Shown here one piece after another: positions 12,901 to 64,000 of a stretch of DNA of 64,000 nt. The stretch comes from Octopus bimaculoides (taxonomy: Eukaryota). The translations under genes and the position numbers were made by a program. The stretch lies in assembly GCF_001194135.2 (NCBI RefSeq), contig NC_068983.1, positions 89,836,866 to 89,900,865 on the forward strand, in the 5' to 3' direction. Below the pieces are notes generated by a model. The model saw nothing but the letters and a program-made list of their open reading frames with translations. It was not told the origin of the DNA and did no database searches. Each line of letters opens with the position of its first letter. Position 1 is the stretch's first letter.

Positions 12901-15900
12901 CAGTGCTGGTGGCATGCAAAAAGCATCCAGTACACTCTGTGTGTGTATGGTTGTCTGGTAAGAAGTTTACTTCCAAGTCATATGCTCTTGGTCCAATCCC
13001 ACTGCATTTTGGGCAAGTGTTTCCTACTATAACTCTGGACCAACCGAAGCCTTATGAGTGAATTTGGTAGAAGGAAACTGAAAGTTTATCATATACATAT
13101 GTGTTATGTGCATTACTGTCCTTGCTTTGGTGTCATGTAATAGTTATAAAAGGGAATGTCACCAAGCAAGCTAGCACTCTCCTTCATTTTGGTCATGGAG
13201 AATATTTCCTTACTTGGAAATAGGCATGGGTTGGCAACAAGAACAGCATTCAGTTGTAGAAAATCCACTTCAACAAATTTCATCCAACCATACAAGCATG
13301 GAAAAGTAGGCATTAAACAATGCTGATGATTTGAGTTAGGATGTTATTACTAGGTGTTATGACATGGTTGGGGGTAGAAACCTGTCTGGTCAAGGAGAAT
13401 ATTACCTTACTTGAAAATAGGTGAGGGTTGGCAACTGGAACAGTATTCAGCTGTAGAAAATCTACCTTAATTTCATCCAACCATACAAGCATGGAAAAGT
13501 TGGCATTAACCCTTTTGATGCCAACCTGGCTGCAGCTGGCCAAAAAACTTTTAAAATGGATAGGAGTTTCTTGCTATCAAGCAGTGATTCCGAATTTGAG
13601 GGCTTTTTAATAGAAGATATGAAGAAATCGAGCAAGGTATGAGTGAACTACAAAAGCACGTCGTGTATGAAAACGAACCTGATATTTCTGTATCTGAAAC
13701 TGAAAGCAGCGATTCTGAAGAAACCGAAAGCGGTGACAGCAAGGATGATTTTACACCTGAATGTAGTAAGAAATTAAAAAATATTTTTATCAACAATTTT
13801 TCTGAGGAGATTGGATCTACTCATAGTCTTTCTCAGGAAGCAAAACGATTAGACTTTTTTTTGTATTTTTTCCAGTAGGTTTGTTTGAAGCCATCACTGT
13901 AGAAACAGAGCGTTACGCTGATACAAATTACTGGAACAATAAGGAATCTTTTGGTGATCAGTACATTTTCAGTATTATGTCAAGGACATGACTTGTGAAA
14001 TTGAACCATCATCGATTGCATTCAAAATGCATATAAAACACTCTACAACCCTGATAGATACCTATCCGTCGATGAGGGCATGGTGGGGTATAAAGGAAGG
14101 GTATACTTCCAACAATATATGCCAGGAAGGCCCACCAAATTGGGGATCAAAGTTTGGAAAATTTGTGGAGCAAATACTGGGCACTGCTGTGGGGTTAGTT
14201 TTTATACTGGGAAAAAGAGACAATGTTAGTCAGCATGGCCTGGGGTATGATGTCTGGAATTTATCACTTCCATACCATAAACAAAGAGGGTGAAATAATC
14301 CAACAGCAGAAAGGAAATCTGCTCGCAGCCGCATACAGAGATAAGAAGCAGATAAATTTTCTATCTACCGGTGCACAACCATGTGTAGATGAAAATGGCA
14401 CCCCATTTATGAGCCTTGATTATAACAGATACATGGGCAGTGTAGATCAGTGAAACTAAATGATAAGTTATCTGGTTGGTAGACTGGGTTATAAATGGTG
14501 GTGATACCTGGTTTGATACAGAGTAAACATGAGCATTGTATATGTATTTATATTACCATATTTTAACATGTATAAGGAACCTTTTTTTTTTTTTTTTTTT
14601 TTTTTTGTCAAAAGTTAGGTTCAGAAAGTATGGGAGTTTCTTATACATGGATAGTATTAGAATCCCTTACAAAACCTTTTCCAAATTTTAAGCCCCAAAA
14701 ATGAGGTGGTTCCTTATACACATTAAAATACAGTATATACCAAATCAGGAGGGGCTCAAAAGCAGTGTGACCATCTGTAGTTCTGAGCAGATGTAGCAAT
14801 GCAGTTGGAGGCAGGTTATTCCTCCAAAACAATAACTGTAGGAAGGAAAAGCAAAACTTGCCTGAGAGATATCCCTCAGAGTTCAGTCGATCTCCATAAA
14901 TTAGACAAAATCGAGGGTCGCAAAAAGCAGTGACATGAATGTCTACATCAACAAAGAAAAATTCCCAGTAGACAGCCTGTTGAAACTTCTTTCCAATGTG
15001 CATTCTGCAAAGTTGTATGTAGAGTGGGATGTTTTACAAGTTTCCATGAGAGAAATATTGCATGAATATTGTATATATGTATGATTAGATTGTATATTTT
15101 TCAAATTTACTTCGTTTTTACTTTTTATTTGCCTGTAAGGTGAGTGACAAGTTTTGATTTAATTTCTATTGCAAATCTTTATTATATATGTCCTTGTGTA
15201 TTCATTTTTTGTTTTCTTTAAAAACAAGTTCCAGTATTTCATTTTATTTTACTTTTACCTGTTATGTGCATTAGATTAAACTGATAATCTAGTATTATGC
15301 ACAATACTTCTATATTAAAATTTTGTTGCATATCCAATTGAATATTGGCTAATGACTCATTTTCTATGGTGATGTTTCAACAAAATTTAATTTAATATTT
15401 TGCTGAATTTGCCTGCAATTAGTCACTTTGAGACTAAAGTTATGCAATAGAATTAAGAACCCTTTCTTCAACTATGTTCCAAAAATCACGTTAATATGTT
15501 AAGTTACAGTTGTTTAACCCTTTCGTTACTATATTTCTGACCAAAATGCACCCCTCATGAGTTTCAATTAAATTCTAAAATAATCATGAATTTAGACTAG
15601 TCTCATTAAACACCTGTAACTTTTATTTATCAACATATTAATGTGATATTTGGAACATAATTAAAGAAAGGGTTCTTAATCAATTCTATTGCATAATTTT
15701 TGTCTCTGGGGTACTGCTAGTGTCTCTCACATGTAAATATTCGTTCAGTTTCACGAATCGTACTCGTTCATAATACTGGAAATATATTCATCGCCAAAAG
15801 GTTCCTGATCACTCCAGTAATTTGTCATTCTGGGTAACTGTCTAATACCCATAATAATATTTATGGCAAAAAATGCCCGTATTTCATCTACAGTTGCAGG

Positions 15901-22428: not shown

Positions 22429-22674
22429 CATCATCATCATCATCGTTTAACGTCCGCTTTCCATGCTAGCATGGGTTGGACGATTTGACTGAGGACTGGT
22501 GAAACCGGATGGCAACACCAGGCTCCAGTCTGATTTGGCAGAGTNNNNNNNNNNAGGACTGGTGAAACCGGATGGCAACACCAGGCTCCAGTCTGATTTG
22601 GCAGAGTTTCTACAGCTGGATGCCCTTCCTAACGCCAACCACTCAGAAAGTGTAGTGGGTGCTTTTACGTGTCA
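22429..22674 (-). mobile_element. 5'-truncated RTE LINE 3' end with (GAT)n tail
   Basis: Near identical to 57398-57567 and 63655-64000; the latter carries the ORF C-terminus. Confidence 0.85.
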
Positions 22675-27900: not shown

Positions 27901-28607
27901 ATGACACCTTTGGGGTCATGCAGCAACAGGTGGACTGTGGGTTTTGATGTGGTGGGAAACAAATGCAGAATGTGTGGGGAGAGGGGTGAAACAGTATGGC
28001 ACATCATTAGTGAATGCCTGAAATTGGCACAACGCAAATACAAAAGATGTCATGGCAATGTGGCAAGAATGGTCCATTGGGAGCTCTGTGGAAATCACGG
28101 CTTACAAAGAGCAAAGATATGGTTTGAGAAAACTCCAGAAGGAGTCACCGAAAATGAGAATTGCAAAATCCTGTAGGATGCAATGATCCAGTGCTATCAT
28201 CCAACCAGACATTGGAAACTGGACGTTGTTGTGGTGAATAAAAAAGAAAGAACATGTACAATAATCAGCATAGCATGCCCTAGTGACAACAGAATCAGTG
28301 CGAAAGAAGAAAAATAAACAACTATGAAGGTTGTGGTCAATGAAGAAAGTAGACGTGATACCAATTGTAATTGGTGCACTTAGAAGTATCAGCACTCAAC
28401 TACTAACATGGCTGAAAAAGATTGGTGCAAGTGTAAAGGTAGAACACCTACAAAAATCAGCTTTGCTTGGAACTGCAACAATTCTTTGCAGGGTTCTTGA
28501 AGCATGACCAGTAAACAAGTGTCACCTTAGTCTGCTGGCTGTAGACAGCTGACACTTTCCATCATACTCAGCAAAATAAGCTGTGAGTTTTCATATAATA
28601 ATAATAA
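27901..28607 (+). mobile_element. R4/Dong-like non-LTR retrotransposon 3' fragment (CCHC knuckle + restriction-like endonuclease)
   Basis: CRMCGERGETVWHIISEC..VARMVHWELC..ENENCKIL*D..LDVVVVNKK..IACP, followed by a (TAA)n tail. Confidence 0.8.
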
Positions 28608-29045
28608 TCGTCATCGTCATCATCGTTTAACGTCCATTTTTCATGCTAGTATGGGTTGGACGGTTTGACTGAGGTCTGGAGAGCCAGCAGCTGCACCAGG
28701 CTCCAATCTGATTTGACAAGGTTTCTACAGCTGGATACCCTTCCTAACGCCAACCACTCTAAGAGTATAGTGAGTGCTTTTTACATGCTACCAGCACAAG
28801 AGCCAGTCAGGTGGGCCTGGCATCAATCACATTTGGATGGTGCTTTTTACGTACCACTGGCACAGGAGCCAGTCTGGGGGTACTGGCATCGGCCAGATTT
28901 GGTTGGTGCTTTCTGCATGCCACCGGCATGGTAGCCAGTCAGGCAGACCTGGCATCAGCCATATTTGGATGATGCTTTTTATGTGCCACCGGCACGGGAG
29001 CCAGTCAGGGGGCACTGGCCACAGCTTCGATATTGGTTATACTTG
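28608..29045 (-). mobile_element. RTE 3'-end copy with internal ~60-bp tandem repeats
   Basis: catcatcgtttaacgtcc..; repeated gtgcttttt..cac(t/c)ggca..gagccagtc units. Confidence 0.8.
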
Positions 29046-30104: not shown

Positions 30105-33100
30105 TGTAGACAGTTACTTCCCTTGAAACCAGTTGTCTCATCCATTGGCCACTGAATGGTGCATGTTGTAGTGTTGCATTGTGAGAGAATTAAAGCTTAT
30201 AGCTTTTGGACGGTGCAACCAAAGTCATTAGTTGTATTTTCTTCCTGCTGCGATTTCAAGTGATGTAACAGTAAAAAATAACCACCTCTTGTATATGAAT
30301 AGGAACGCAAAGAAACTGCCTTTATCTCTTTCTATACAAATATTGTAATTTGCATGCAGTATCAAAATTAAAATGACTTACGGCCATATTTGCAAGTTCT
30401 TATCATCCTTTTATTCTTGTATTTGGAGAATGTCTGCCTTCTACATTTCAGCTTTCTTTGTTAGGAGCAAAAGTTCCTAAAAATGGTGACCCTGAAAAAC
30501 AAATAGACAAGTTTACATTTTACAAGCTTACAGCGAATGAAAAGAAAAACAGACAAGTAGAACTGTTAACTGCTCTAAACAGTCGACATCTAAAAATTTC
30601 ATTTTTTCACATTCAAACTTTGTTTTGGCGTTCCTTGACATTCCTTTCTTCTCAACGGGTTTTCTGCCTTTATAAAATGAGCAATTTTCCACTTCCTCAA
30701 TTCCATGGGGAAGCAAAAATATGGTTTTCGCAACTGGAATCCTACTTTATTGCTACCAGTACTCGCCAGATACTGGCCAAACTGCACATCGCATTCTCCA
30801 GCTTACCGTCCCCACTCGTTTCGTCTGTTGGAGATTTGCTGACGGATACACCAGATGGGGTGTCCTACGAAGAATTCGAGTCCAAGGTGCTACGCAGAAA
30901 CTCTCTGTCCGCTGAGAGCAAGTTCTGCTCATTGCTGCAGGATGAATATTTGGGAGACAGAAAATGAACTGAGTTTTTGAGACGGCTACGAGAGCTTGCA
31001 GCTGACTCTTACGAGGGTCAGGCCTTTGTTAAACAACTCATTTTTTTTTTCTGGTATGCCACTCAGCATCCAGTCAGCACTGGTACATCTGTTGGACACC
31101 ACAGCAGACAGGATTCTTGAGTTCTCCAAAAACCTCTCTTTGGATAATATCATCGCCGGTGCCTCCTCTAAAACTTCTTCCATCAAGGCAGATAAACAAT
31201 CTTCAGAGACCTTGAAAGTGATCCAGGAACACACTCAGCAGGTTTCGCGCCTCTTTAGGGATCGCTCTTGTCTTTCTTCTTCAAGGTCCCGTTTAAGAAA
31301 CTGGCCTAGACAGCGTTCTTCTTCACGTGACCTCGCACTACCAGCCCCTCCGGTTTGCTGGTACCACAGACGGTTCAAGGATCAAGTTCATCAATGTATA
31401 CAGCCCTGCTCTTACACTCCTGCAGAAAACAAGCTAGGGAGACCCTGTGCACGTCAGTCGTCTCCCCCATTGAAAATCCTCACTGTGCATTCTTCGTCTG
31501 AGACACAAAATCTTCAAAGTCTTTTATGGTAGACACAGGAGCCAATGTTAGCATTTGGCCTCGACGGTATACGTTCACCGATCCTGCTCTCTCAGACATT
31601 TCTTTGTTCGCGGTTAACCATTCTGCTATCAGGACTTACGGTCAAATCTCCCTTACTCTCGATTTGTCACTCTGTAAAGTATTTCGGTGGATTTTCGTTA
31701 TTGCTGACTTACCACATCTAATTTTGGGGGCAGATTTTCTTCACCATTATTCACTCCTGGTGTATGTCAAGGGACGTCGACTTTTGGATAGTACCACTTT
31801 CCTCACTGCCTCCGTAGAGGATACTACTGTTCCTGCTGTGAGTCCTTCATTCTTTGTAGCTGTTGCAGGAAACATGTATCTATAGTTACTTGCATCATTT
31901 CCCGAATTAATGGATTTGGTATTCAAGCCAGCTCATTCTACTAAGCATTTTATAATGACTAAAGGACCTCCTGTATTTTCCAGACCTCGTTGTTTGTCTC
32001 CAGAAAAGCTGCAGATTGCCAGAGCTGAATTCGAGCATATGCTCCAGCTTGGCCTCATTCGTCCTTCCAAGAGCCCATGGGCCATGCCTCTGCACTTAGC
32101 AAAGAAAAGCGCCGTCGATTTTCGTCCTTGTGGTGACTTTAATACTGTCACGGTTCCAGATCGCTATCCAATTTCACATTTTCCAGGATTTTACTTCTGC
32201 CCTACATGAATGCAAAACTTTTTCCAAAATCAACTTGGTATGCGCATACCATCAAATTCCCATTAACCCGGAAGAAGTAACAACATCTTTCAGAGCATTT
32301 GAATTTTTATCCATACCTTTTGGGCTTCGTAACGCAGCAAGCACATTCCAGAGATTTATTGATGCGGTCATTCGTGGCTTACCTTTTGTTTTCGCATATG
32401 TGGATGATCTCCTAATTGCCAGCACCATTCAAGATCAACATATCCAGCATTTAACACAGTTGTTCCAACGTTTGCGCTCTTTTGGTGTGAAGATCAATCC
32501 GTCCAAGTGTGAGTTTGGATCTTCCAGCTTGGGACACCTCATAGATGCTTCCTTCTAAATTTGAGGCCATCAAACGTTTGTCTTCTTCTGTGTCTTTAAA
32601 ACAGTTAAGAACATTTCTGGGTCTAATTAATTTCTATAGAAGATTCATTCCCAACTGTGCAAAAAAGTTGTCTCCTTTGACCCAGCTTTTAAAAGGACAG
32701 CCAACTAAAAATGCTAATATTTCATTGTCTCCTACTGCTTTGCAAGCTTTCAAAAAGGCCAAAACAGAGCTAGCCAATTCATCCTTTTTGGCTCATCCTG
32801 CTCCTGACGCCAGTCTGTCTCTAACAGTTGACGCTTCAGATTTAGCTGTGGGTGCTGTGTTGTAACAAACTGTAAATGGACAAACTCAACCCCTGGCTTA
32901 CTTTTCTTGTCAGCTGCAACCTGCTGAATTGCGTTACAGCGTTTTCAGCAAAGAATTTTGTGGTGAAGAACATAGCTCACCTTCTCGAGGGTAGGGAGTT
33001 CACGGTTTTCACTGATCATAAACTGTTAATGTTTGCACTGTTTACCAAAACTGACCGGTACTCGCCCAGAGAGACCAGGCACTTGGATTATATCTCGCAG

Positions 33101-35210
33101 TTCATCAGTGACATTCGCCACATTGCGGGCACTGACAACATTCCTGCAGACACCCTGTCTCGCCTCCCAGTTTATTCTTTGTCTCCTGCCTCAATTGATC
33201 TGGTCGCTATGGCTGCAGACCAACCTTCCTTGGACTCTTTGGATGTGACTTCTCCACAGTTTTCCTGTTGCAAATTCAAGAACCTGCCTCTTCCATCATC
33301 TGAAGGGACCATTCTTTAGGATGTTTCCACCAGGTCACCCTGATCCCTGGTCCCCGATCATTATCGTCGTCCTGTTTTCGAAGCCTTGCACTCGCTATCA
33401 CATCTAGGCATTGCGACCACAGTTAAGCTTATTTTGGCTCGATTTTTCTGGCCGAATATGCGATGTTCTATTACTGTTTGCTCATACGCCTGTCTACATT
33501 GTCAGCGTGCGAAAATACACAGACATGTGTGAGTTCCTTTGGAGCACTTCTAGCTGCCAGATTCCAATTTCCAGCACATTCATATCAACATTGTTGGTCC
33601 ATGGCCTCTCGGTTGCGGGTTCACATATATCCTGACCTGCATTGACAGATTCTCCAGATGGCCTGAAACCATTCCTCCAGCAGACATTTCTGCAATCTCT
33701 GTTGCCAGAGCACTCATTTCAGGTTGGATCTCTTGTTTTGGAGTACCCTCCAGGATTACGACTGATCGTGGTCGCCAGTCTATTTCGTGAACTGTCATGA
33801 TTGCTCGGAATACAGCATATTCACACCACAAGCTACCACCCCGCTGCGAACGGAATGGTAGAGCGTTTTCATAGGCAGCTAAAAGCCACGATTCATGCTG
33901 TTCCTAAACCTCATCATTGGTCAGAGTTCTTTCCTATTGTTCTACTGGGCTGCCGTTCAGCTATCAATGTAGATTTGGGATACTCTTCTGCCGAACTCTT
34001 GTATGGCACCATTTTGGCACTACCTGGCCAAATGTTAGCACCCATTGATGTATAGAATGCTGATCCAACTTCACTCAACTTAGATCCTTCTTTGCGGACC
34101 TACCTCCAACGTTGACTAGACAGTAGTCTGTATATTCTACGGTTCCTACTGACATATCCACATGGATGCATGTGTTTATCCAGAACGATTCCGCTAAGGG
34201 TCCATTGACGCCACCTAATTCTGGTACTTACCGTGTAATTAAGTGCACAGAGAAACTGTTTACTGTGAATATAAACGGAAAAATATAACTGTCTCTGTCA
34301 ACAGAGTTAAAAAAGCATTCACCAAAACGGACACACCTATCTTTCCACATACATATTCATGCCCACCACCACAAGCACCTACACCTAATAAAACAAATTG
34401 CAAAGACACTCTATACCAACCTCAACACGTTCGTGCAGGTCAGTACATTGGCCAAAAAGACTATCAAAAATAATTTTTATATGACTTCCTGCCTTTAACT
34501 GTTACGGTGATACTCATGTGTTTTCCAATTTCACATTCTTGTTACAAAAAGAGAAAAAAAAACACACAGAGACATTTATATATATGTCCACACTACACAC
34601 ATACACACTGTTTGCCATGAATCACATACGTCCATACAGTTGTATATATGTCCACAAGCACCACACACACTGTTGTTTTCGTTTTGTATGCCTGTCGCAT
34701 TTTCTTTTGTTCTCTGTGCATGCAGATTTTTTTCTCAATGTTTCTTTCTTTTTCACATTGTACACATTTCTCTCACTGCTGCCTCTTTGCATTCTCTGCG
34801 TTTGTATTCCCTCAACTTTCTACCCACCGTTCTTTAGTTCCGACTTCGAGTCTTGCAAGGAGGCAGGGATGTAGACAGTTACCTCCCTTGAAACCAGTTG
34901 TCTCATCCATTGGCCACTGGATGGCGCACGTCGTGGTGTTGCATTGTGGGAGAATTTAATGTGTAGCTTTTGGACGACGCAACCCAAGCGGTCAGATATA
35001 TTTTCTTCCTGCTGCGTTTCCAAATGATGTAACAGTCAAACATAACCACCTCTTGTATATGAATACAAATGCCTTTATCTCTTTCTGTACAAATACTGTA
35101 ATTTGCATGCAGTATCAAGATTAAAACGACTTACAGCCGTATTTGCAAATTCTTGTATTTGGAGAATGCCTGCCTTCTACGGTTCAGCTTTGTTAGGAGT
35201 GTAGCACTCA
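30105..35210 (+). mobile_element. Gypsy/Ty3 LTR retrotransposon, CsRn1/Kabuki-like, degraded
   Basis: Diverged LTRs 30105-~30481 and 34870-~35210; PBS tggtgaccctga; PPT aaggaggcaggga; gag CWYH-x9-C-x3-C; protease VDTGA; RT YVDD; RNase H DAS; integrase H..H..C..C, IDRF, TDRG, NGMVERFHR. Order PR-RT-RH-IN. Confidence 0.95.
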
Positions 35211-36965: not shown

Positions 36966-37235
36966 ATCATCATTTAAGGTCCGTTGTCCATGCTGGCTTG
37001 GGTTGGACGGTTTGACTGGGCTGGAAGGTTGCACCAGACTCCAGTCTGATTTGGCATGGTTTTCTATGGCTGGGTGCCCTTCCTAATGCCAACAACTTCA
37101 AGAGTGTAATGGGTGCTTTTACGTGCCATTAGCACAATACCGGGGTGCATTTACGTGCCACTGGCATGGGTGCCAATTTGTGTGACGCCGGTATCTGCCA
37201 TGACTGCAATTTTTCTCAGCTTGATGGGTCTTCTT
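36966..37235 (-). mobile_element. Older RTE 3'-end copy
   Basis: catcatttaaggtccgttgtccatgctggc.. Confidence 0.7.
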
Positions 37236-46540: not shown

Positions 46541-47607
46541 TGTAAGAACGACAGTGCGAACCCAAAAAGAGAAATGGTGACGAATGGAAAACAGGGCTCC
46601 TTTATTATAACGCGTCACACGGTCAAACACAAACTATATCAAATGATATAAATATGTTATACTTCGATAACATAGAGATTTCGTAAATGCCAGTAAGGAA
46701 GACGATAGAACACAACCGATAGAGATGAATAACAGTAATATTTATTGTAGCATTAAATTGTATGTCTGTGTGTGAGTGTATGTGACATAATAAAACATAA
46801 TAAAAGATAGGCTGTCGTGTAAAGAAAAGAGTGTGTGTAAGTGATACATGTATGTGTATGCGTGAGATACAGCAGATAGAAAAAGAGTCAGTAACACATA
46901 TAAGAATTTGCCAGTTCTTAGAGTACACAATAGTAAGAGTCTGTATGTAAGAAGTTGAGGCGTGTGGGACAGAGCGATCACTCGTCGTGATGTTAGGGTT
47001 TCCGTGCCGGGCCGGGTTCCTGAATACAGGTGTTCTTCGCAGGCTAGGTTCTTGTCTATTATTTATCGTGGTGAAGATGAATCACACAAACAGAATCGAA
47101 GAGAGAAGTTCTACGGTAGTTTGGTTAGCTTGTGTACATAGAAGTCATGTTGACGCTGTCGGGGATGCTGGTAGTTGTAGTGTCGTGTTGACGCTGGTAG
47201 TCGTAGTTGTATGAAGCTGTTGATGTCCCTGGAGCTGCTGCTGCTGCTCTGTGTGGTACACGGAACAGGTCTCTAAGAGATCTGAACCGCGACGATTTGG
47301 CAGGGATAATTTAGTCTATTTATAGCTGAAATAGGGGCTCCAGGAAAGCATTAGAAGAACCCTATCACGTGACCTTATTAGGGGCTGTGATTGGTCAGTT
47401 TGCGTTCTGGCGGGAACGGTACGAGGCAGTTGCCGCTTCAAATAATAATCAGTCACGTGATGGATACAGTAGGCTGCTCTCTACTACGCCCGAACTTGAT
47501 TATATTTATAACAGTGGGGAAGATGGTTTGTTTGTATATAAAGGCAATAGATGGTTTTGTATATAATGGTGATCGAGGTGTTAATGTTTTGTATATAATG
47601 GCGATCA
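46541..47607 (-). mobile_element. Solo-LTR-like element, CpG-rich
   Basis: TG..CA ends; minus-strand CCAAT (47390-94), TATAAATA (47317-24) and AATAAA (46601-06) in promoter-to-polyA order. No TSD confirmed. Confidence 0.55.
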
Positions 47608-47940
47608 TCATCATCGTTTAACATCCGCTTTCCATGCTAGCATGGGTTGGACGATTTGACTGAGGACTGGTGAACCAGATGGCTACACCAGGCTCCAATC
47701 TGATTTGGCAGAGTTTCTACAGCTGGATGCCCTTCCTAACGCCAACCACTCCAAGAGTGTAGTGGGTGCCAGTCAGGCAGTACTGGCAACGGCCACGCTC
47801 AAAATGGTGCATTTTACATGCCACCTCCACAGGAGCCAGTCCAGTGGCACTGGCAACGATCTTGCTCGAATGTCTTTACACATTCCACTGGCACAAGTGC
47901 CAAGAAGGCGACGCTGGGCATAGGTGCCATCACGATTTCG
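47606..47940 (-). mobile_element. RTE 3'-end copy
   Basis: catcatcatcgtttaacatccgctttccatgctagc.. Confidence 0.8.
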
Positions 47941-54977: not shown

Positions 54978-55056
54978 TATACACACACACACACACACAC
55001 ACACATACACACACACACATACACACACATATTCATATATATATATATATATATAT

Positions 55057-55382
55057 CATCATCATCATCATCGTTTAACACCTGCTTTCCCTGCTAGCAT
55101 GGGTTGGACAGTTTGACTGAGGACTGGCAAGCCAGAAGGCTGTACCAGGTTCCAATCTGATCTAGCAAAGTTTCTACAGCTGGATGCCGTTCGTAACACC
55201 AACCACTCCGAGAGTGTAGTGGGTGCCTTTTATGTGCCACTGGCATGAGGGCCAGTCAGACAGTACTGGCATCAACCATGCTTGAATGCTGCTTTTTATG
55301 TGCCACTGACATGGTAGCCAGTCAGGCAGCACTGGCTATAGCCACTCTCGACTCTCGAACAGTGCTTTTTATGTGCCACCGG
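55057..55382 (-). mobile_element. RTE 3'-end copy between microsatellites
   Basis: (CA)n(TA)n on the left; (TA)n(GATA)n(GACA)n on the right. Confidence 0.8.
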
Positions 55383-57397: not shown

Positions 57398-57567
57398 ACT
57401 ACACTCTCTGAGTGGTTGGCGTTAGGAAGGGCATCCAGCTGTAGAAACTCTGCCAAATCAGACTGGAGCCTGGTGTTGCCATCCGGTTTCACCAGTCCTC
57501 AGTCAAATCGTCCAACCCATGCTAGCATGGAAAGCGGACGTTAAACGATGATGATGATGATGATGAT
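57398..57567 (+). mobile_element. Young RTE 3'-end copy, 5' part in N-gap
   Basis: By eye, 3 differences in about 150 bp from the 63655 copy. Confidence 0.85.
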
Positions 57568-58328
57568 TACAGCTGACCTTACCAGTCAATTTTGCGCTAG
57601 GGATTCAACAGAGTGTTAGTCTGATTATGTAACTGTTATGGTGAGAATCATGACACCCCCTGTGAGAATGGACTAGCTGAACTTGTATAAGTGGCAGCAT
57701 ATTTGGCTGAAGGAGAGATGAGAAATCAAAGGAAGTTGAATGGTGTCACAGAAAATTGTTGAGAAGGTGTTATAGTTCGTTGAGAGTTGTTTTGGATTGG
57801 TTGCAGTTATTGACAGAATATTTGGAAATACATCAAGTGGAGACAGTTGGTGTCTACCCCATTCCATGGTATTATATATTACCCTGTTATAAGACCACAT
57901 TATAAAAGTGACATACAGTGCCATGATACAAAAGTGGCAATGAGGATATCCAGTTATAAAAGTGGCAACGAGTGATTTGAAGCTTACGTTGGTAATTAAC
58001 AATTTTTTATGATACAAAAAATTTGTTAATTATAGAAAACCTATTAGCTGACATATTACAGTTGCAAAAGCAACAGGAGCTGCACCAACAACTACAAAAG
58101 CAACAGGAGCTGCACCAACAACTACAACAGCAACAACTGCAACACAATCAGTTGCTGGAACTGATGTTGAAGCTGGGAAACACGGCAAGTTCATTTTTGC
58201 CAGACAGCATAACGAATGCTATAACAGAGTTTAGTTATAACCCAGAAGAAGGTATAATGTTTTTGGCTTACTTCAGAAGAAGGAAACAATTGAATTGCTT
58301 TCCAAAATGTTCAGCTATAAGAGTTCCC

Positions 58329-58923
58329 GGATCTTTTTTAAAACGGGGGCCACATTTTTCATTAATGTTTTACGTAGTGTTTTTGGTACCGAAAGACTTT
58401 CAAACTTCGTATACTTATCTATTTTGTGTTATAGAACAGAAAAATATTTTTGTATTCGAATTTATTTCATGTAAAAAATTGTCTTATTTCGATAATTTCA
58501 ACCAATCACTGACAAGTATTCAGTTGTTTATATTTACTCCTTTGGCTGATTAAGCCATAGCTTCATTTTATTTGCTTTTTTCATTTTAAATTTGCTTTTT
58601 TCATTTTCTTTTTTTTTTCTTCGTTTTATTTGCTTTTTACTTTTTAAATTTGCTGTTTTACCCTAACCTTAGCCCTAACCCTATCACCGATAGAATTGTT
58701 TCAGAATCGTTTGTTTATGTAGTCAGCACTTAATGTATATCGGCTGAATGGACGTCAGTGATTGGTTGAAATTACAGAAATACGACAACTTTAACATGGA
58801 ATAACTTAGGGATTTCTTTTTTTTTTTAAGAAGACTAAGAGAAAAAGATGTTTTATATGACACATTCCAAGTTTCAAAGTGTTTCGTTAATGAAAAATGT
58901 GGCCCCCGTTTTAAAAAAGATCC
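58329..58923. mobile_element. 595-bp MITE, perfect 37-bp TIRs starting GGATC, 8-bp TSD GAGTTCCC (Merlin/hAT/P-type)
   Basis: Excision restores gag frame ETIELLSKMFSYKSSLFSTHWECLNLIK. Confidence 0.9.
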
Positions 58924-61702
58924 GAGTTCCCTGTTTAGCACTCACTGGGAGTGTTTGAACTTAATAAAAGAAGAGGACAAAGATTTTTTCAGTTATGCCA
59001 GAAGCGTGAATAAAATGTAAAAAAAAATTAAACTAAAGGAATTATCTCTGGACATGTCTAAATGCCTCATCTTTGTGTAAGGTTTGATAGCAAGTAAAGA
59101 TTCAGAAATACATGCATGTATTCTTACAAAACTAGAACAGGCGGACCAGAATTTAATCCTATAGGTAATAGCAGAGGAGTATCTAAGAATTATCAGCTTG
59201 CAACAGGACATAGAGAAAATTGAAGGAAAAAATTTCTCTCAAGTACAGAGATGTCAACCAGGAATAAATAAAAGAAAAAGAATGTTACGACCAAATCCAT
59301 GCTATGGGTGTGGAGGTATTCATTTTAAGAAAGACTGTCCATTTAAAACTCTGAAATATTTTAGTTGTCAAAAAATAGGACATAAAAGCTCACACTATAT
59401 AGCAAAGCAAAAAAGGTCGGAAAAAAATTCTTCCAAAAAGGTTTGTTCAACAGAAAGTCGTGTCAACACCTAAAAAAGAAAGTATGTGTATGTAAAAATA
59501 AACGATGCGAATGTGAAACTACACAGGTAGTAACAATTGTTGATACTGGCACATAGAAGAAAAGTGGGAAACCTACATTAAAGAAAACATCGAAAAGTGT
59601 GTGAAGCATTACAGGCGAAAGATTACACTTCTTAGGCAAAAATGATAAGTGACAATACATTTTGTGGTAAAACCTGTAAAGCAAAAGTGTTTGTGTTAGA
59701 AAATGCAACAAACTTGTTCAGTACTGACTGGATGGAGTTGTTTGATTTGTGGAACCTCCCCATAAATCTGTTCTGTAAAAACCTAAATGATTTTTCCTTC
59801 AGTAAGAATAAGCCGTCAGATAAATTGAAGAAAAAATTTTTAAATGCTTTACCTGAAGTGTCGTCAGATAAATTAGGTTTCTGAACTAAGACTGAGGCAT
59901 GTTTCCAAATTGTGGAAAACACAATACCAGTGTACAAACCAAAAAGAATGGTACCTTTTGCTGTAATAAAACATGTTGATGAAGAATTAGACAGATTAGA
60001 GAAAATTGGAGTAATCCAAATGGTGGAATATGCAAAATGGGCAGCTCCAACAGTGTGTATTAAAAAAAAGAAAACAAAATCAGGGTGTGTGCCAATTTTT
60101 CCACTGGCTTGAATGAATATCTGAAAACATGTCACTATCTGCTACCTACTCTGGAGGATATTTTTACGAAGTTAGACAGGGGCAAGGTATTTTCAAAACT
60201 GGATCTCTCCGATGTGTGCCTATAAATTACCTAAGAGTGAATACGCATAAAGGACTACATAAATATAACAGATTACCATTTAGTCTAAAGGTCGCACCTG
60301 CAATTTTTCAATAGATTACGGATGCAATGTTAGCAAACTGTGAATTTGCAATTCCATACCTGGATGATATATTATTTAAAAGGGAATCTCGTGATCAGCA
60401 TGTCGAGCATGTAAAATGTGTTTTTCAAAAAATAAGAGATTACAGTTTCACACTGAGTGAGGGAAAATGTGAATTATTCTTACCTAAATTTAAGCATTTA
60501 AGACAAATTATAGGCAGGAATGGATGACAACCAGACCCATCGAGGGCAGAGGCAATTAAGAATAGGCCTCCTACTAATATAATGACCGTACAAGCTTTTC
60601 TAGGTCTAGCAAATTATTATCAAAATTATATACCAAATATGTATGAGATGAGAGCTCCATTAAATCATTTCTTAAAAATATGTAAAGTGGAATTGGGTCA
60701 AATAATTGTCAAAAGGTATGTGACAATATTAAAAAAATATTAATATCAGATTTGTCGCTGGCTCATTTCGATCCTGCAGCAGAGATTGTAGCTTCAGACA
60801 CATCTGTATACAGCATAGGAGCAGTAATGCTTTGCAAATATAAAGACAGTAATATCAAGGTGGTGGTTCATGCCTCAAGTTCTCTGATAGTGGCAGAGAA
60901 AAAAACTATAGTCAAATAGAGAAAGAAGCTCTAGATTTTTGCACAGTAGAAGTTTTAGGCGACAAACTGATCACCAACAATTATTATCAACTTTTGGTTC
61001 GCAAAACGGAAATCCTACTCATACTGCAAATAGGTTACAACACTGGGGTATGATATTGTTGAATTACAACTTTAAGATGGAGTATATTCCATCCAAGAAG
61101 TTAGACCATGTGGATTGTTTATCAAAGTTAATTCCAAAAAATACAGAACTATTCAAAGATACCATGATTGTCACATTGTGAGTGGAAAATGAAATAAAAA
61201 CATTTTGTGTAAGGACATTTGGGAGCTGCAAGTAACTGTTCAAGATATAAAATTAAAATTGGAGAATTGGAGAATGACAAATTCATTGCAAAGATGAAAG
61301 AAATGTTGAAGGTGAAAGAAAATGAAAATATACATAACACAAATGCGTACCATTTTTCTCTGTGTGATAATGTGCTAATGTACGCACAAAGAGTATATTA
61401 AATGAATTTTATATGGGACACCCAGGGACTATAGGAATGAAATCAGTAATGAGGAGTTATGTGTATTGGCCTACTATAGACCATGATATTGAACAATTGG
61501 TGAAATCCTGTAGAGGTTGTGCTCTCACAGCAAAGTCACCACTGGCGAAATTCCAATCAAGGCCTAAGACAGACAGTCTTACATATAGATTTTTCTAGAC
61601 CAGTAAATGATGCATATTATCTGATCATAGTAGACAGCTATAGACAAGTGGCTGGAGATATGTAAATGCAGTCAACCAACCTTAATGGTAACAATAAGGT
61701 TC

Positions 61703-62212
61703 TATAGATGGAATTACGGTGGTGTGTGTTCTACATCGAGTCACCATTATAGATTGTGGACCGTGGTGCGTGTTCTACGTCAGGTCACCATTATACATAG
61801 TGGTTCGTGGTGTGTGTTCTATGTTGGGTCACCAACTTTAGATGGTCATGGTGAAGCATGGTGAAACCATCTAACGACTCTGTTTAGAAGGTTGGAATAA
61901 TACATATAATATACCAGTTGGAAAAGAGAGAAAGACGCAACCGAGTAGAAGGTTTAGAGAGAACATTTATTGATATGTTAATGTCATTTTATAGGAGACA
62001 AAAATAGATGATAAAAGGAAGATATTTCTGTAGTAAAAAGGTGAAATTAGAAAGAACGGTTGGTCATTGAAGTAAAATGAAAGCTGGTACTGAACTACAG
62101 AAAGGAATGCGTGTTCTAAGTCGGGTCACCATTATAGAAGGAATTGTGGTGTGTGTTCGTATCATGTCAGGGTCACCAATGGTTTCACAACACTTCACCT
62201 CAACCATCTATA
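61703..62212. mobile_element. 510-bp insertion with TATAGATGG..CCATCTATA ends, 4-bp TSD GTTC and five tRNA-Trp 3'-end copies
   Basis: Excision restores integrase frame TIRFLHEHFA; copies at 61721-46, 61765-90, 61809-34, 62104-31, 62148-78. Confidence 0.88.
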
Positions 62213-63439
62213 GTTCCTTCACGAACATTTTGCATGATACGGTGTCCTAGACACCATAGTATTGGATAACGGAATGCAGTTTTTGGGGTACGAATTAAAA
62301 AATTTCTGTGAGAGGTATGCAGTCAATTACATCTCTACCCTGCTGTACCACCCAAGATTAAATGGGTACACTGAAAGGTTCGTAGTCACATTTAAGCAAG
62401 CACTAAAAAAATCAGGAAATAAATTAGGCAATGATGCAGCACTAACTCAATTCTTAAAGGTTTACAGGGTAACAGCTTACCTAAACACCTGTTCAGGCAA
62501 GGTGCCCGCAAAGCTACTGTTTGCCTAGAAGATAAAATCAATTTTAGATAAATTGTTACCTACAAAAAAAAAAAACTTACAGGGAAAACCCAAGATACAC
62601 AACAAAATATTTTAATGTGGGAGATAAAGTTCATTTCAAAATATATAAGAATGGAAGACAAGGATGGTATAGTGATGAAAAGAAAAGGCAGTATGATGTA
62701 CATAATAAAAAGTCAGATAGGAGAGCACAAATGACATTCGAACTAGTTGAATACTTGACATACCAAAGAAAGAGAAGAAATACCAACGGAAGTGTGTTAT
62801 GACTTGTTTAATGTTCCAACACCAAAAGAGGTTGAACCTAGGCGAACCAGCAATAGAAAACATAAACAAATAGAACAAGTTGAAATAGTCCCTAAGTGAG
62901 AGAAGTATTAAAACTTCCCAGGAAATTAAAATCTCAAAATAGGGAGAGGTGATGCTAAAAGATAGAATAAAATTAAATAAAAAAGTTGTCAGAAGTCAAA
63001 TCTCAAAATGGCAAGAATCATGACACCCCCTGTGATAATGGACCAGCGGAACTCATATAAGTAACAGCGTGTTTGACTGAGGGAGAGATGAGAAATTGCA
63101 GGAAGTTGAAATGTGTCATTCATAAGTTCAGTGAGTCACAGAAAATTGTTGAGAAGTTGTTATAGTTCGTTGAGAGTTGTTTTGGATTGGTTACAGTTGT
63201 TGGCAGAGTATTTGGGAAAATATCAAGTGGAGACAGTTGATGTCAACCCCGTTCTGTGGTACAATATATCACATGGGATTAGCACACGACCAGAGCTTGC
63301 CTTAGGAGGTGCAGGGCCCAATTGGGAACAATTTTGGTGGGCCCCAGGTTCCCAGTCAACTTGCACCAAGGTCTATAAAATCATAAAAATATAAAAATCC
63401 AGCCGTTGAAACTATGCCACTGTGCGGTGCCATGTAAAA

Positions 63440-63605: not shown

Positions 63606-63654
63606 ATATGCATATATATACATACACTTATTATGTATATATTTATGTGTGTGT

Positions 63655-64000
63655 CATCATCATCATCATCATCATCGTTTAACGTCTGCTTTCCATGCTA
63701 GCAAGGGTTGGACGATTTGACTGAGGACTGGTGAAACCGGATGGCAACACCAGGCTCCAGTCTAATTTGGCAGAGTTTCTACAGCTGGATGCCCTTCCTA
63801 ACGCCAACCACTCAGAGAGTGTAGTGGGTGCTTTTACGTGTCACCCGCACGAAAACGGCCACGCTCGAAATGGTGTCTTTTATGTGCCACCCGCACAAGC
63901 CAGTCCAGGGGCACTGGCAACGATCTTACTTGGCTTGCCGGGTCTTCTCACGCACAGCACATTTCCAAAGGTCTCGGTCAGTAGTCATCGCCTCGGTGAG
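63655..64000 (-). mobile_element. Young RTE LINE 3' end including the ORF C-terminus; continues beyond the window
   Basis: Minus strand reads LTEAMTTDRDLWKCAVREKTRQAK* (stop 63926-28), then 3' UTR and (GAT)n tail; CpGs retained. Confidence 0.88.

What the first reader, a model, noticed from the sequence alone, without database searches (positions are those of the whole stretch)
61703..62212. Mobile unit built from five CCA-ended tRNA-Trp 3' fragments, altered at the m1A58 position
Seen: a 510-bp insert with a 4-bp TSD (GTTC) and TATAGATGG..CCATCTATA ends; removing it restores the host integrase frame. It holds five ~26-31-nt repeats ending GTCACCA (three left, two right). Four are preceded by a short spacer starting with a variant of the terminal motif TATAGA, giving a ~44-bp unit. 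The copy at 62148-78 (ggtgtgtgttcgtatcatgtcagggtcacca) aligns to the eukaryotic tRNA-Trp 3' end as I recall it (GGTTGCGTGTTCGAATCACGTCGGGGTCA+CCA), with A58 read as T. The other four lack about 4 nt exactly at the T-loop G57-A59. An inner ~33-bp inverted repeat lies at 61837-70 and 62179-212, and the middle has minus-strand TATA and AATAAA motifs. Known: CCA is added after transcription, m1A58 normally stops RT so a PBS is about 18 nt, and CsRn1-type Gypsy elements prime on tRNA-Trp. I also recall Ginger1 DNA transposons carrying tRNA-Ala fragments in their TIRs. Inference: either a non-autonomous integrase-mobilised family that repeatedly captured its own primer by RT read-through, or a Ginger-like element with tRNA-Trp relics.
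Basis: partly seen in the sequence, partly recalled or inferred. Interest (0 to 1): 0.8.

Follow-up and report, generated by a model that had tools for sequence, protein, structure and literature searches.

The report
LTR-like insert carrying tRNA-Trp primer copies
A 510-bp piece of retrotransposon end-sequence, inserted into another retrotransposon's integrase gene, carries five DNA copies of the tail of the tRNA that primes its reverse transcription; the same layout occurs in Gypsy-type elements of other animals, so it is an unusual variant of a known kind of element.

Summary
A 510-bp insert (61703-62212) has 9-bp inverted ends and GTTC on both sides. Removing it plus one GTTC restores a conserved Gypsy integrase motif without a gap.

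Five blocks end in GTCACCA. The best one (62146-62178) equals tRNA-Trp positions 48-76 plus CCA, apart from three CpG transitions and A58 read as T.

On the minus strand each block reads as an over-long primer-binding site (TGGTGACC...). One base upstream of it lies a copy of the element's own last 13-16 nt. That is the primer/U5 junction of a tRNA-Trp-primed LTR element.

A metagenome scan found the same layout in other animals' DNA:
- 38-39-nt tandem units of [LTR end + tRNA-Trp 3' fragment with CCA];
- next to Gypsy-type gag-PR-RT-RNaseH-IN genes;
- with position 58 hypervariable.

My reading is that this is LTR-derived DNA of a tRNA-Trp-primed Gypsy-type element, most likely a solo LTR. 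Its primer copies arose by read-through past m1A58 and were then multiplied as 44-bp units. Blocks b-e share two deletions, so they are duplicates rather than five separate captures. Ginger is rejected.

Not testable here: copy number in the source genome, the autonomous partner and the species' tRNA-Trp. I rate it a new variant of a known kind, of moderate to high interest.

The parts
61699..61702 (.). Left copy of the target-site duplication GTTC
   Evidence: removing 61703-62216 restores the integrase motif TIRF|LHEHFA without a gap.
61703..61718 (-). Terminal LTR-end copy (minus strand CGTAATTCCATCTATA); the 3' end of the element in LTR sense
   Evidence: pair I4. It is nearly identical to the internal copy at 62133-62145 (AATTCCTTCTATA).
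61719..61746 (-). Block e: over-long tRNA-Trp primer-binding site (plus strand = tRNA about positions 45-76 with CCA, carrying the T-loop deletion)
61747..61762 (-). One spacer base plus an LTR-end copy (minus strand GGTCCACAATCTATA+A)
   Evidence: CAATCTATAATGGTGACT matches the junction pattern.
61763..61790 (-). Block d: over-long tRNA-Trp primer-binding site
61791..61806 (-). One spacer base plus an LTR-end copy (minus strand GAACCACTATGTATA+A)
61807..61834 (-). Block c: over-long tRNA-Trp primer-binding site, directly next to the core LTR end
61837..61878 (-). Hairpin-like module at the end of the core LTR (TTTAGATGGT..ACCATCTAA). It contains CATGGTGAAG twice and forms the left arm of the inner inverted repeat.
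   Evidence: pair I1; period 10, 1.9 copies.
61879..62081 (-). Body of the element, with minus-strand TATAAAA (61993-61987) and AATAAA (61971-61966); proposed U3/R/U5
   Evidence: Motifs only, so weak evidence.
62082..62131 (-). Block b: tRNA-Trp copy with CCA. The core is 62108-62131, with a possible extension back to about tRNA position 20 including the anticodon loop.
   Evidence: score 44 against shuffles 16.1 +/- 2.8; anchored p about 0.005 for the extension.
62132..62145 (-). One spacer base plus an LTR-end copy (minus strand AATTCCTTCTATA+A)
   Evidence: CCTTCTATAATGGTGACC, 1 mismatch.
62146..62178 (-). Block a: the most complete T-arm/acceptor copy. The T-loop is full length and reads TTCGTATC (A58 as T).
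   Evidence: The same variant occurs in L054.
62179..62212 (-). The 5' end of the element in LTR sense (TATAGA+TGGTTGAGGTGAAGTGTTGTGAAACCA+T); right arm of the inner inverted repeat
   Evidence: (pairs I1, I4).
62213..62216 (.). Right copy of the target-site duplication GTTC
57638..63272 (+). Host: a decayed Ty3/Gypsy-type LTR retrotransposon (LTR pair 57638-57882 / 63008-63272, about 80% identical) whose integrase core is interrupted by the insert

Best explanation
The insert is LTR-derived DNA of a tRNA-Trp-primed Ty3/Gypsy-type retrotransposon. It lies in minus orientation and was put there by an integrase (duplication of up to 4 bp). It is most likely a solo LTR whose U5 end has absorbed part of the leader.

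The five 'tRNA' blocks are over-long primer-binding sites. They are DNA copies of the 3' part of the mature, CCA-ended and modified tRNA-Trp primer. They were made when plus-strand strong-stop synthesis did not halt at m1A58 but ran on to about position 45, and in one copy perhaps to about position 20, leaving a T at position 58.

Each block is still joined, through one base, to a copy of the last 13-16 nt of the LTR (..CCATCTATA). That join is the primer/U5 junction.

The 44-bp [LTR end + primer-binding site] unit was then multiplied. This happened either by the reverse transcriptase re-aligning on the primer/U5 junction after stalling in the tRNA, or by ordinary tandem duplication. Because every unit ends in a usable LTR end followed by a usable primer site, priming at a distal unit would pull the proximal units into the LTR.

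What is shown:
- the insertion footprint;
- the tRNA-Trp-with-CCA identity of the blocks;
- the junction structure;
- the shared deletions in b-e;
- the same architecture next to Gypsy genes elsewhere.

What is inferred:
- the read-through and re-alignment mechanism;
- the solo-LTR status;
- the assignment of U3, R and U5.
For: Insertion footprint and host restoration.

Primer origin:
- Block a equals tRNA-Trp 48-76 plus CCA except for three CpG transitions and A58T. CCA is not encoded by eukaryotic tRNA genes (established knowledge), so the template was mature tRNA.
- Alignment score 42-44 against dinucleotide shuffles of 16-18 +/- 3.

Junction with the LTR end.

Orientation: TATAAAA and AATAAA occur only on the strand on which the blocks read as primer-binding sites.

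Duplication rather than repeated capture: shared deletions and a fixed 44-bp period.

Independent parallels come from the metagenome scan. It gave 57 loci, 53 of them non-bacterial.
- Most read tRNA-Trp fragment-CCA + 1-7 nt A/T-rich spacer + TGTGGG.. or TGGAGG.. as the LTR start.
- Tandem arrays of [about 14 nt of LTR end + 24 nt of tRNA], period 38-39, occur in L011/L036, L028, L040 and L052.
- The adjacent genes are gag(DUF7041)-RVP-RVT_1-RT_RNaseH-Integrase_H2C2-rve.
- L007 has an LTR pair, with the array only in the 5' leader.
- L017 is a 54-bp unit + mini-LTR flanked by TCTC on both sides.
- L028 has the terminal module inverted after CCA, as in the window's block a.

A mature, modified tRNA as template:
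- Position 58 reads A 33, G 15, C 2, T 2 in 52 units.
- The 5' ends of the units cluster at position 53 (21 units), about 45 (9) and about 27 (4).
- m1A58 is the plus-strand stop and position 54 a second stop (PMC8599865).
Against: - The termini are TATAG..CTATA, not the canonical TG..CA. In the metagenome families the integrated ends are TG.., and the A/T spacer is left out.
- No second copy, no paired LTR and no partner element with these ends is present in the window, so a solo LTR cannot be told apart from other LTR-derived products.
- Blocks a and b sit just inside the other (U3) end, after an inverted copy of the terminal module. The priming model does not explain that.
- The TATA and poly(A) motifs are weak evidence in 35% G+C DNA.
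- The species' own tRNA-Trp was not available. Position 57/58 was compared with human isodecoders only.
Confidence: 0.55

Rival explanations
1. It is a self-propagating non-autonomous retroelement family (a miniature element). The arrays of [LTR end + primer site] are functional. They offer several priming sites and several integrase ends, and the element is copied and inserted in trans by a Gypsy-type partner.
For: - It is compact, with both integrase-type ends and primer sites present.
- Mini-elements made only of these parts exist elsewhere: the 54-bp L017 with a TCTC duplication and very short LTRs in L049.
Against: - There are no direct terminal repeats (LTR pair) and no polypurine tract next to a 3' repeat.
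- Only one copy is in the window.
- A six-frame protein search and two DNA pattern scans found no other copy, although these collections probably lack the source genome.
- Whether it forms a family is untested.
Confidence: 0.2
2. It is a one-off dead-end product: an aberrant strong-stop-type cDNA (LTR plus re-copied primer junctions) that happened to end in an LTR-end copy and was integrated once.
For: - The structure reads as U3-R-U5 followed by repeated primer junctions.
- The non-canonical ends include the six bases that in the related metagenome families form the un-integrated spacer.
- L017 looks like such a product.
Against: - Blocks b-e differ from one another mainly by CpG transitions and share deletions. 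That fits inheritance and decay equally well.
- The presence of blocks at both ends needs more than one aberrant step.
Confidence: 0.13
3. It is a cut-and-paste DNA transposon derivative (a MITE) of a superfamily that makes 4-bp duplications (Ginger-like or other). Its subterminal repeats merely resemble, or anciently derive from, tRNA-Trp.
For: It has a 9-bp perfect and a 34-bp imperfect inverted repeat, subterminal repeats containing the terminal motif, small size, and a duplication of up to 4 bp.
Against: - Ginger termini (TGTNR) and targets (CCGG/CCGT, RTATAY) are not met.
- All five blocks point the same way rather than being mirrored at the two ends.
- The CCA end and the primer/LTR-end junction are specific to reverse transcription.
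- The same architecture sits next to Gypsy gag-pol genes in other animals.
Confidence: 0.07
4. It is a chance resemblance: an ordinary minisatellite inside an unrelated repeat.
For: Blocks e and c on their own score no better against tRNA-Trp than against some tRNA-Arg sequences.
Against: - Block a matches at 25/29 with only CpG transitions and position 58 differing.
- Alignment scores lie 7-10 sd above shuffles.
- The CCA end and the junction motif are enriched.
- The architecture is found independently elsewhere.
Confidence: 0.02

Closest known systems
Solo LTRs / LTRs of tRNA-Trp-primed Ty3/Gypsy (Metaviridae) retrotransposons
   Same: An integrase-type insertion with a 4-bp duplication and short inverted ends. 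There is a promoter/poly(A)-like core. A primer-binding site complementary to the tRNA-Trp 3' end lies 1 nt from the LTR end. The metagenome relatives carry Gypsy-order gag-pol genes.
   Different: The ends are TA..TA rather than TG..CA. The primer-site complementarity runs 28-33 nt (perhaps about 55) instead of 18 or fewer. The primer site with the LTR end is repeated five times and lies inside the inserted unit, at both ends.
Plus-strand strong-stop control by m1A58 and the second stop at position 54 in retroviruses (PMC8599865)
   Same: The same step of reverse transcription, in which the tRNA primer is copied. Complementarity beyond 18 nt is known in lentiviruses, up to position 55. Many metagenome units stop at position 53/54.
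   Different: Here the read-through products are fixed in the germ line, extend to the variable loop or further, and are tandemly multiplied. In HIV-1 read-through is reported to give DNA that cannot be integrated.
The strong-stop-DNA model for the origin of tRNA-derived SINEs (Ohshima, Okada and colleagues, 1990s; from my own knowledge, paper not retrieved)
   Same: A CCA-ended tRNA sequence joined to the complement of a retroelement U5 end. That is the structure the model postulates as an intermediate.
   Different: There is no intact pol III A/B-box head at the 5' end and no SINE tail. The fragments are 3' parts only and are embedded in an LTR-like unit with integrase-type ends.
Ginger1 / Ginger2 DNA transposons (PMC2836005)
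   Same: A 4-bp target duplication and an integrase-related mechanism with inverted ends.
   Different: TGTNR termini, CCGG/CCGT or RTATAY targets and 40-270-bp terminal inverted repeats are not found here. The paper reports no tRNA content.
Cassandra TRIMs (5S rRNA-derived sequence inside LTRs; bioRxiv 10.1101/2023.07.14.548913, abstract seen) and Drosophila Gypsy with two tRNA-Lys binding sites (PMC1635307, title and start of the abstract seen)
   Same: Small-RNA-derived sequence carried inside LTRs (Cassandra), and more than one primer tRNA binding site in a Gypsy element.
   Different: Cassandra carries a gene-like 5S copy with its promoter, not a primer copy. Neither case is known to me to have CCA-ended tandem [LTR end + primer site] units.

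Membership tests
LTR of an LTR retrotransposon (Ty3/Gypsy type), solo LTR | Flanked by a 4-6-bp target-site duplication; removal restores the target | tested here: met
   GTTC on both sides. The host integrase motif is restored without a gap. The duplication could also be read as 2-3 bp.
LTR of an LTR retrotransposon (Ty3/Gypsy type), solo LTR | 5'-TG..CA-3' termini within short inverted repeats | tested here: not met
   The ends are TATAGATGG..CCATCTATA. TGG..CCA lies 6 nt inside them. A TG..CA reading needs an empty site that is 8 nt longer, which the integrase alignment rejects.
LTR of an LTR retrotransposon (Ty3/Gypsy type), solo LTR | The LTR end is followed within a few bases by a primer-binding site complementary to a tRNA 3' end | tested here: met
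   ..CTATA + A + TGGTGACC.. occurs three times at up to 3 mismatches against 0.01 expected, plus the core junction at 61835-61837.
LTR of an LTR retrotransposon (Ty3/Gypsy type), solo LTR | Identical LTRs on full-length relatives with gag-pol between them | not testable with these tools
   There is no other copy in the window and the source genome is not searchable. Only analogues from other organisms were found.
LTR of an LTR retrotransposon (Ty3/Gypsy type), solo LTR | U3 promoter and R poly(A) signal on the sense strand | tested here: inconclusive
   TATAAAA and AATAAA lie 22 nt apart on the minus strand only. These are motif matches in A+T-rich DNA.
Ginger DNA transposons | TGTNR termini | tested here: not met
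   The element starts TATAG. The criterion comes from PMC2836005.
Ginger DNA transposons | CCGG/CCGT duplication (Ginger1) or an RTATAY target (Ginger2) | tested here: not met
   The duplication is GTTC in the target AAGGTTCCTT.
Ginger DNA transposons | Terminal inverted repeats of 40-270 bp and a partner encoding a Gypsy-integrase-like transposase | tested here: inconclusive
   The terminal repeat is 9 bp. A 34-bp imperfect repeat has one arm internal. The partner is not testable.
tRNA-derived SINE | A 5' tRNA-related head with pol III A and B boxes | tested here: not met
   No tRNA is found by ARAGORN or Rfam. The blocks are 3' fragments, four of them with a broken T-loop (B box), and none is at a 5' end in tRNA sense with an A box.
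tRNA-derived SINE | A 3' tail (A-rich or LINE-derived) with variable-length duplications | tested here: not met
   There is no tail. The ends are inverted repeats with a duplication of up to 4 bp.
TRIM (terminal-repeat retrotransposon in miniature) | Two direct terminal repeats flanking a primer site and a polypurine tract | tested here: not met
   The only direct repeats are the 44-bp units. The 34-bp terminal modules are inverted.

The most novel reading that the evidence does not exclude
Reverse transcriptases of tRNA-Trp-primed Gypsy-type elements, in at least two distant animal lineages, habitually copy deep into their modified primer and re-align on the primer/U5 junction. This produces arrays of [integrase end + primer site]. 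Such arrays may act as self-contained modules that let LTRs grow, shrink to 16-55 bp, or bud off integration-competent mini-elements. If so, this would be the long-postulated 'strong-stop DNA' route from tRNA primers to new tRNA-bearing mobile elements, seen at an intermediate stage. It would also leave a fossil record of where modified bases in tRNA-Trp stop or mislead a reverse transcriptase in vivo.
Probability: 0.2. Interest if true: 0.8.

Novelty: new variant of a known kind. Interest (0 to 1): 0.6.

Why it matters
Textbook reverse transcription copies exactly 18 nt of the primer tRNA. Read-through past m1A58 is considered abortive.

Here read-through products are fixed in a genome. They carry the CCA end, a misread position 58 and stops that fit other modified positions. 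They are multiplied together with the LTR end.

The same design recurs next to Gypsy-type genes in unrelated animal DNA. If general, it would give three things:
- a natural read-out of how retroelement reverse transcriptases handle tRNA modifications;
- a mechanism by which LTR ends and primer sites can be duplicated, lost or re-defined;
- concrete intermediates for the old idea that tRNA-derived mobile elements arise from primer-linked strong-stop DNA.

Arrays of sites complementary to 3' tRNA-Trp fragments would also be obvious targets or sponges for tRNA-fragment-based silencing. That last point is speculation and was not tested.

Tried and rejected
- Six-frame translation of the element as a protein query, to find gene calls on other copies: 3198 candidates, none at E <= 10.
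- Host integrase query at E <= 1e-20: nothing. The threshold was too strict and the search was wasted.
- Exact look-up of two window ORFs in public assemblies: not on record.
- Element-specific DNA pattern in metagenome contigs and in viral contigs: no match. A shorter junction pattern in viral contigs gave 6 hits, about the number expected by chance, and I ignored them.
- Rfam at gathering and at permissive thresholds: no tRNA hit, only a chance lncRNA match at E = 0.1.
- Identifying the organism:
  - A probable exon (18319-18867) has a 95%-identical product in Logan assemblies SRR11869384, SRR11869385 and SRR11869390.
  - No paper in the library names those runs, and a SINE sequence search in papers found nothing.
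  - From memory the abundant SINE looks like an octopus SINE. This is unverified.
- TG..CA ends with a TATA, CTATAG or imperfect 8-bp duplication: rejected by the integrase alignment.
- Extension of block b tested without anchoring: not significant (259 of 1000 shuffles). Only the anchored co-linear test gives p about 0.005.
- The window's other LTR elements as partners: the host LTRs and the 30.1-35.2-kb element have different ends.
- Literature searches for tandem or duplicated primer-binding sites: mostly noise from other meanings of 'PBS'.

Full report
**1. What is in the sequence**

The window reads ...AAG GTTC|TATAGATGG ... CCATCTATA|GTTC CTT. The insert is 61703-62212 (510 bp), with a 9-bp perfect terminal inverted repeat and GTTC on both sides. 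It interrupts the integrase of a decayed Gypsy-type element whose LTR pair lies at 57638-57882 and 63008-63272.

Joining the host across one GTTC gives ...KWLEICKCSQPTLMVTIRF|LHEHFA*YGVLDTIVLDNGMQF. I collected homologues of the downstream integrase piece from 1.84 billion representative proteins (1995 hits at E <= 0.001). Eight of them were aligned with two versions of the host.
- The version with one GTTC aligns without a gap through the conserved TIGFLHELFARFGV motif.
- The alternative reading has canonical TG..CA ends (TGG..CCA) and a TATA or CTATAG duplication. Its empty site is 8 nt longer, which shows as three alignment columns that no homologue has.

So the inserted DNA includes the TATAGA at both ends. 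Because C61702 and G62213 extend the inverted repeat, the duplication can be read as 2-4 bp. Four is the natural reading.

**2. The repeats**

Five blocks end in GTCACCA: e 61719-46, d 61763-90, c 61807-34, b 62105-31 and a 62146-78. On the left they form a 44-bp tandem array (2.6 copies, 83% matches).

In four of the five blocks CCA is followed by T plus a variant of the terminal motif:
- TATAGATTGTGG
- TATACATAGTGG
- TATAGAAGGAAT
- and, after two bases, TTTAGATGGTCA.

The fifth, block a, is followed by A and then the inverted terminal module.

On the minus strand this reads [..CCATCTATA] A [TGGTGACC...]. That is an LTR end, one base, and a primer-binding site. The 18-nt junction pattern occurs three times at up to 3 mismatches against 0.01 expected. 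TGGTGACC occurs seven times in the window against 1.24 expected.

**3. Are they tRNA-Trp?**

I took documented human tRNA sequences from Supplementary Data 2 of PMC6379413.
- Block a matches positions 48-76 plus CCA at 25 of 29 positions without a gap.
- Three of the four differences are CpG transitions (C50T, C63T, G67A), in a window whose CpG o/e is 0.38. The fourth is A58 to T.
- Local alignment scores are 42-44, against 16-18 +/- 3 for dinucleotide shuffles.
- In a limited panel of 20 human Trp, Gly, Arg and Gln tRNAs, Trp is best or joint-best for all blocks.
- Blocks b-e lack 4 nt in the T-loop and one acceptor G.
- Block b may continue 5' to about position 20, through a recognisable anticodon loop (CTACAGA for CTCCAGA). 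The anchored test against random window 32-mers gave 26 of 4839. An un-anchored test was not significant.

Eukaryotic tRNA genes do not encode CCA (established knowledge). The template was therefore mature tRNA.

**4. Relatives elsewhere**

The source genome could not be searched. I therefore scanned metagenome contigs for tRNA-Trp positions 53-76 with CCA, leaving position 58 free. This gave 57 loci. Four are bacterial tRNA genes and the rest are eukaryotic DNA, many from a few related projects.

Most loci read tRNA-Trp fragment-CCA, then a 1-7-nt A/T-rich spacer (ATTATA, ATATA), then TGTGGG.. or TGGAGG... That is an LTR end seen from the other strand.
- Family alignments show an LTR of more than 700 nt on one side and the internal region on the other.
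- The internal genes are gag(DUF7041)-RVP-RVT_1-RT_RNaseH-Integrase_H2C2-rve, which is Gypsy order.
- L011/L036, L028, L040 and L052 carry tandem arrays of [about 14 nt of LTR end + 24 nt of tRNA fragment] with period 38-39. This is the same design as the window's 44-bp units.
- In L007 the 3' LTR has no unit, while the 5' leader has a degenerate array. Arrays can therefore start outside the LTR.
- L017 is a 54-bp insert made only of LTR start + tRNA fragment + spacer + a 16-nt palindromic mini-LTR, flanked by TCTC on both sides.
- L028 has the terminal module inverted after CCA, as at the window's right end.
- In these families the integrated ends are TG.. and exclude the spacer. In that respect the window element differs.

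**5. Signs that a modified tRNA was the template**

Among 52 distinct units, positions 57-58 read AA 28, AG 15, GA 5, AC 2, AT 1 and GT 1.

Within one family whose copies are 85-90% identical over 0.6-2 kb, the T-loop is TTCGAATC, TTCAGATC, TTCGTATC (L054, identical to the window's block a) or TTCATATC.

The 5' ends of the units cluster at position 53 (21 units), about 45 (9), about 41 (4) and about 27 (4). One unit is nearly full length (L030).

PMC8599865 shows that m1A58 is the plus-strand stop and position 54 a second stop, and that read-through gives non-complementary cDNA. Linking the other clusters to m7G46/D47 and m2,2G26 is my inference from general tRNA knowledge. The scan pattern fixed all other positions of the matched 24-mer, so the hypervariability of position 58 rests mainly on the within-family comparison.

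**6. Mechanism proposed**

The element is LTR-derived DNA in minus orientation. TATAAAA (61993-87) and AATAAA (61971-66) lie on that strand only, which is weak evidence.

Plus-strand strong-stop synthesis ran past m1A58 into the variable loop. The nascent end re-aligned on the primer/U5 junction, or the unit was later duplicated. Either route gives [LTR end + 1 nt + 28-33-nt primer site] repeats. Priming at a distal repeat would move the proximal ones into the LTR. A solo LTR, or a short cDNA ending in an LTR-end copy, was then inserted by an integrase.

Shared deletions and the fixed period show that b-e are duplicates. Block a is complete but short, and block b is long but deleted. These two cannot be derived from each other. 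The minimum is therefore one long ancestral copy, or two captures.

Three things remain unexplained:
- why blocks a and b sit just inside the U3 end, after an inverted copy of the terminal module;
- why the ends are TA..TA;
- why the terminal module (61843-61869) itself contains TGGTGA twice, in the opposite orientation.

**7. Comparison with known systems, and verdict**

Ginger is rejected on termini, targets and the length of its inverted repeats. Its defining paper does not mention tRNA. SINE and TRIM definitions are not met.

The closest known things are:
- LTRs of tRNA-Trp-primed Gypsy elements;
- the m1A58 and position-54 stops;
- the strong-stop-DNA model of SINE origin (from my own knowledge, paper not retrieved).

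I found no description of tandem, CCA-ended [LTR end + primer site] arrays in the searchable literature. However, repeat-library annotations could not be consulted.

I rate it a new variant of a known kind, with interest about 0.6.

Noticed in passing
window 22429-22674, 28590-28887, 36966-37128, 47604-47866, 55019-55248, 57398-57571, 63652-63930: A high-copy SINE-like repeat of about 170-270 bp, often preceded by (ATC)n, with the core ..TTTCCATGCTAGCATGGGTTGGACG... Some pairs are 97-100% identical, so it is young. Two inverted copies bracket the host Gypsy element. From memory it resembles an octopus SINE; this is unverified.
   Followed up: partly
window 30105-35199: A second LTR retrotransposon. 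Its LTR pair (30105-30467 and 34870-35199) is 81.5% identical, with TGT..GCA ends and gag/RT ORFs. A 12-nt tRNA-Trp-like primer site, TGGTGACCCTGA, lies at 30484, about 14 nt after the LTR end. tRNA-Trp priming therefore seems to be used by another family in this genome.
   Followed up: partly
window 15751-16439: ORF fragments around an N gap read like a piggyBac-type transposase (..WFPATVDEIRAFFAINIIMGIRQLPRMTNYWS..). Not checked against Pfam.
   Followed up: no
window 18319-18867: A G+C-rich ORF, probably a real exon. A 95%-identical 147-aa product is encoded in Logan assemblies SRR11869384, SRR11869385 and SRR11869390, and a 56%-identical one elsewhere. This could be used to identify the organism.
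   Followed up: partly
window 61843-61869: The terminal module TGGTCATGGTGAAGCATGGTGAAACCA contains TGGTGA twice. These are the first six bases of the tRNA-Trp primer site, in the opposite orientation to the five blocks. TRF sees CATGGTGAAG x1.9. It may be a relic of even shorter primer copies, or chance.
   Followed up: no
L017 117-178: A 54-bp insert, TGTGGGTCG + tRNA-Trp 53-76 with CCA + ATATA + TGTGGGTGCTCCCACA, flanked by TCTC on both sides. It appears to be an integrated mini-element made only of integrase ends and one primer copy.
   Followed up: partly
L030 about 6120-6190; L005, L029, L044, L008: L030 holds a nearly full-length retro-copy of tRNA-Trp with CCA. Several other loci hold copies that start just 3' of position 26. 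In L044 the copy lies near a non-LTR element ORF (Exo_endo_phos + RVT_1), so not all CCA-ended tRNA-Trp copies need belong to Gypsy elements.
   Followed up: no
L046, L049, L052, L009, L050: A 16-nt palindrome, TGTGGG-NNNN-CCCACA, marks the U3 end of the LTRs in these families. In L049 it reduces the whole LTR to about 55 nt. The LTR ends appear to be built from a hairpin that carries both integrase ends.
   Followed up: no
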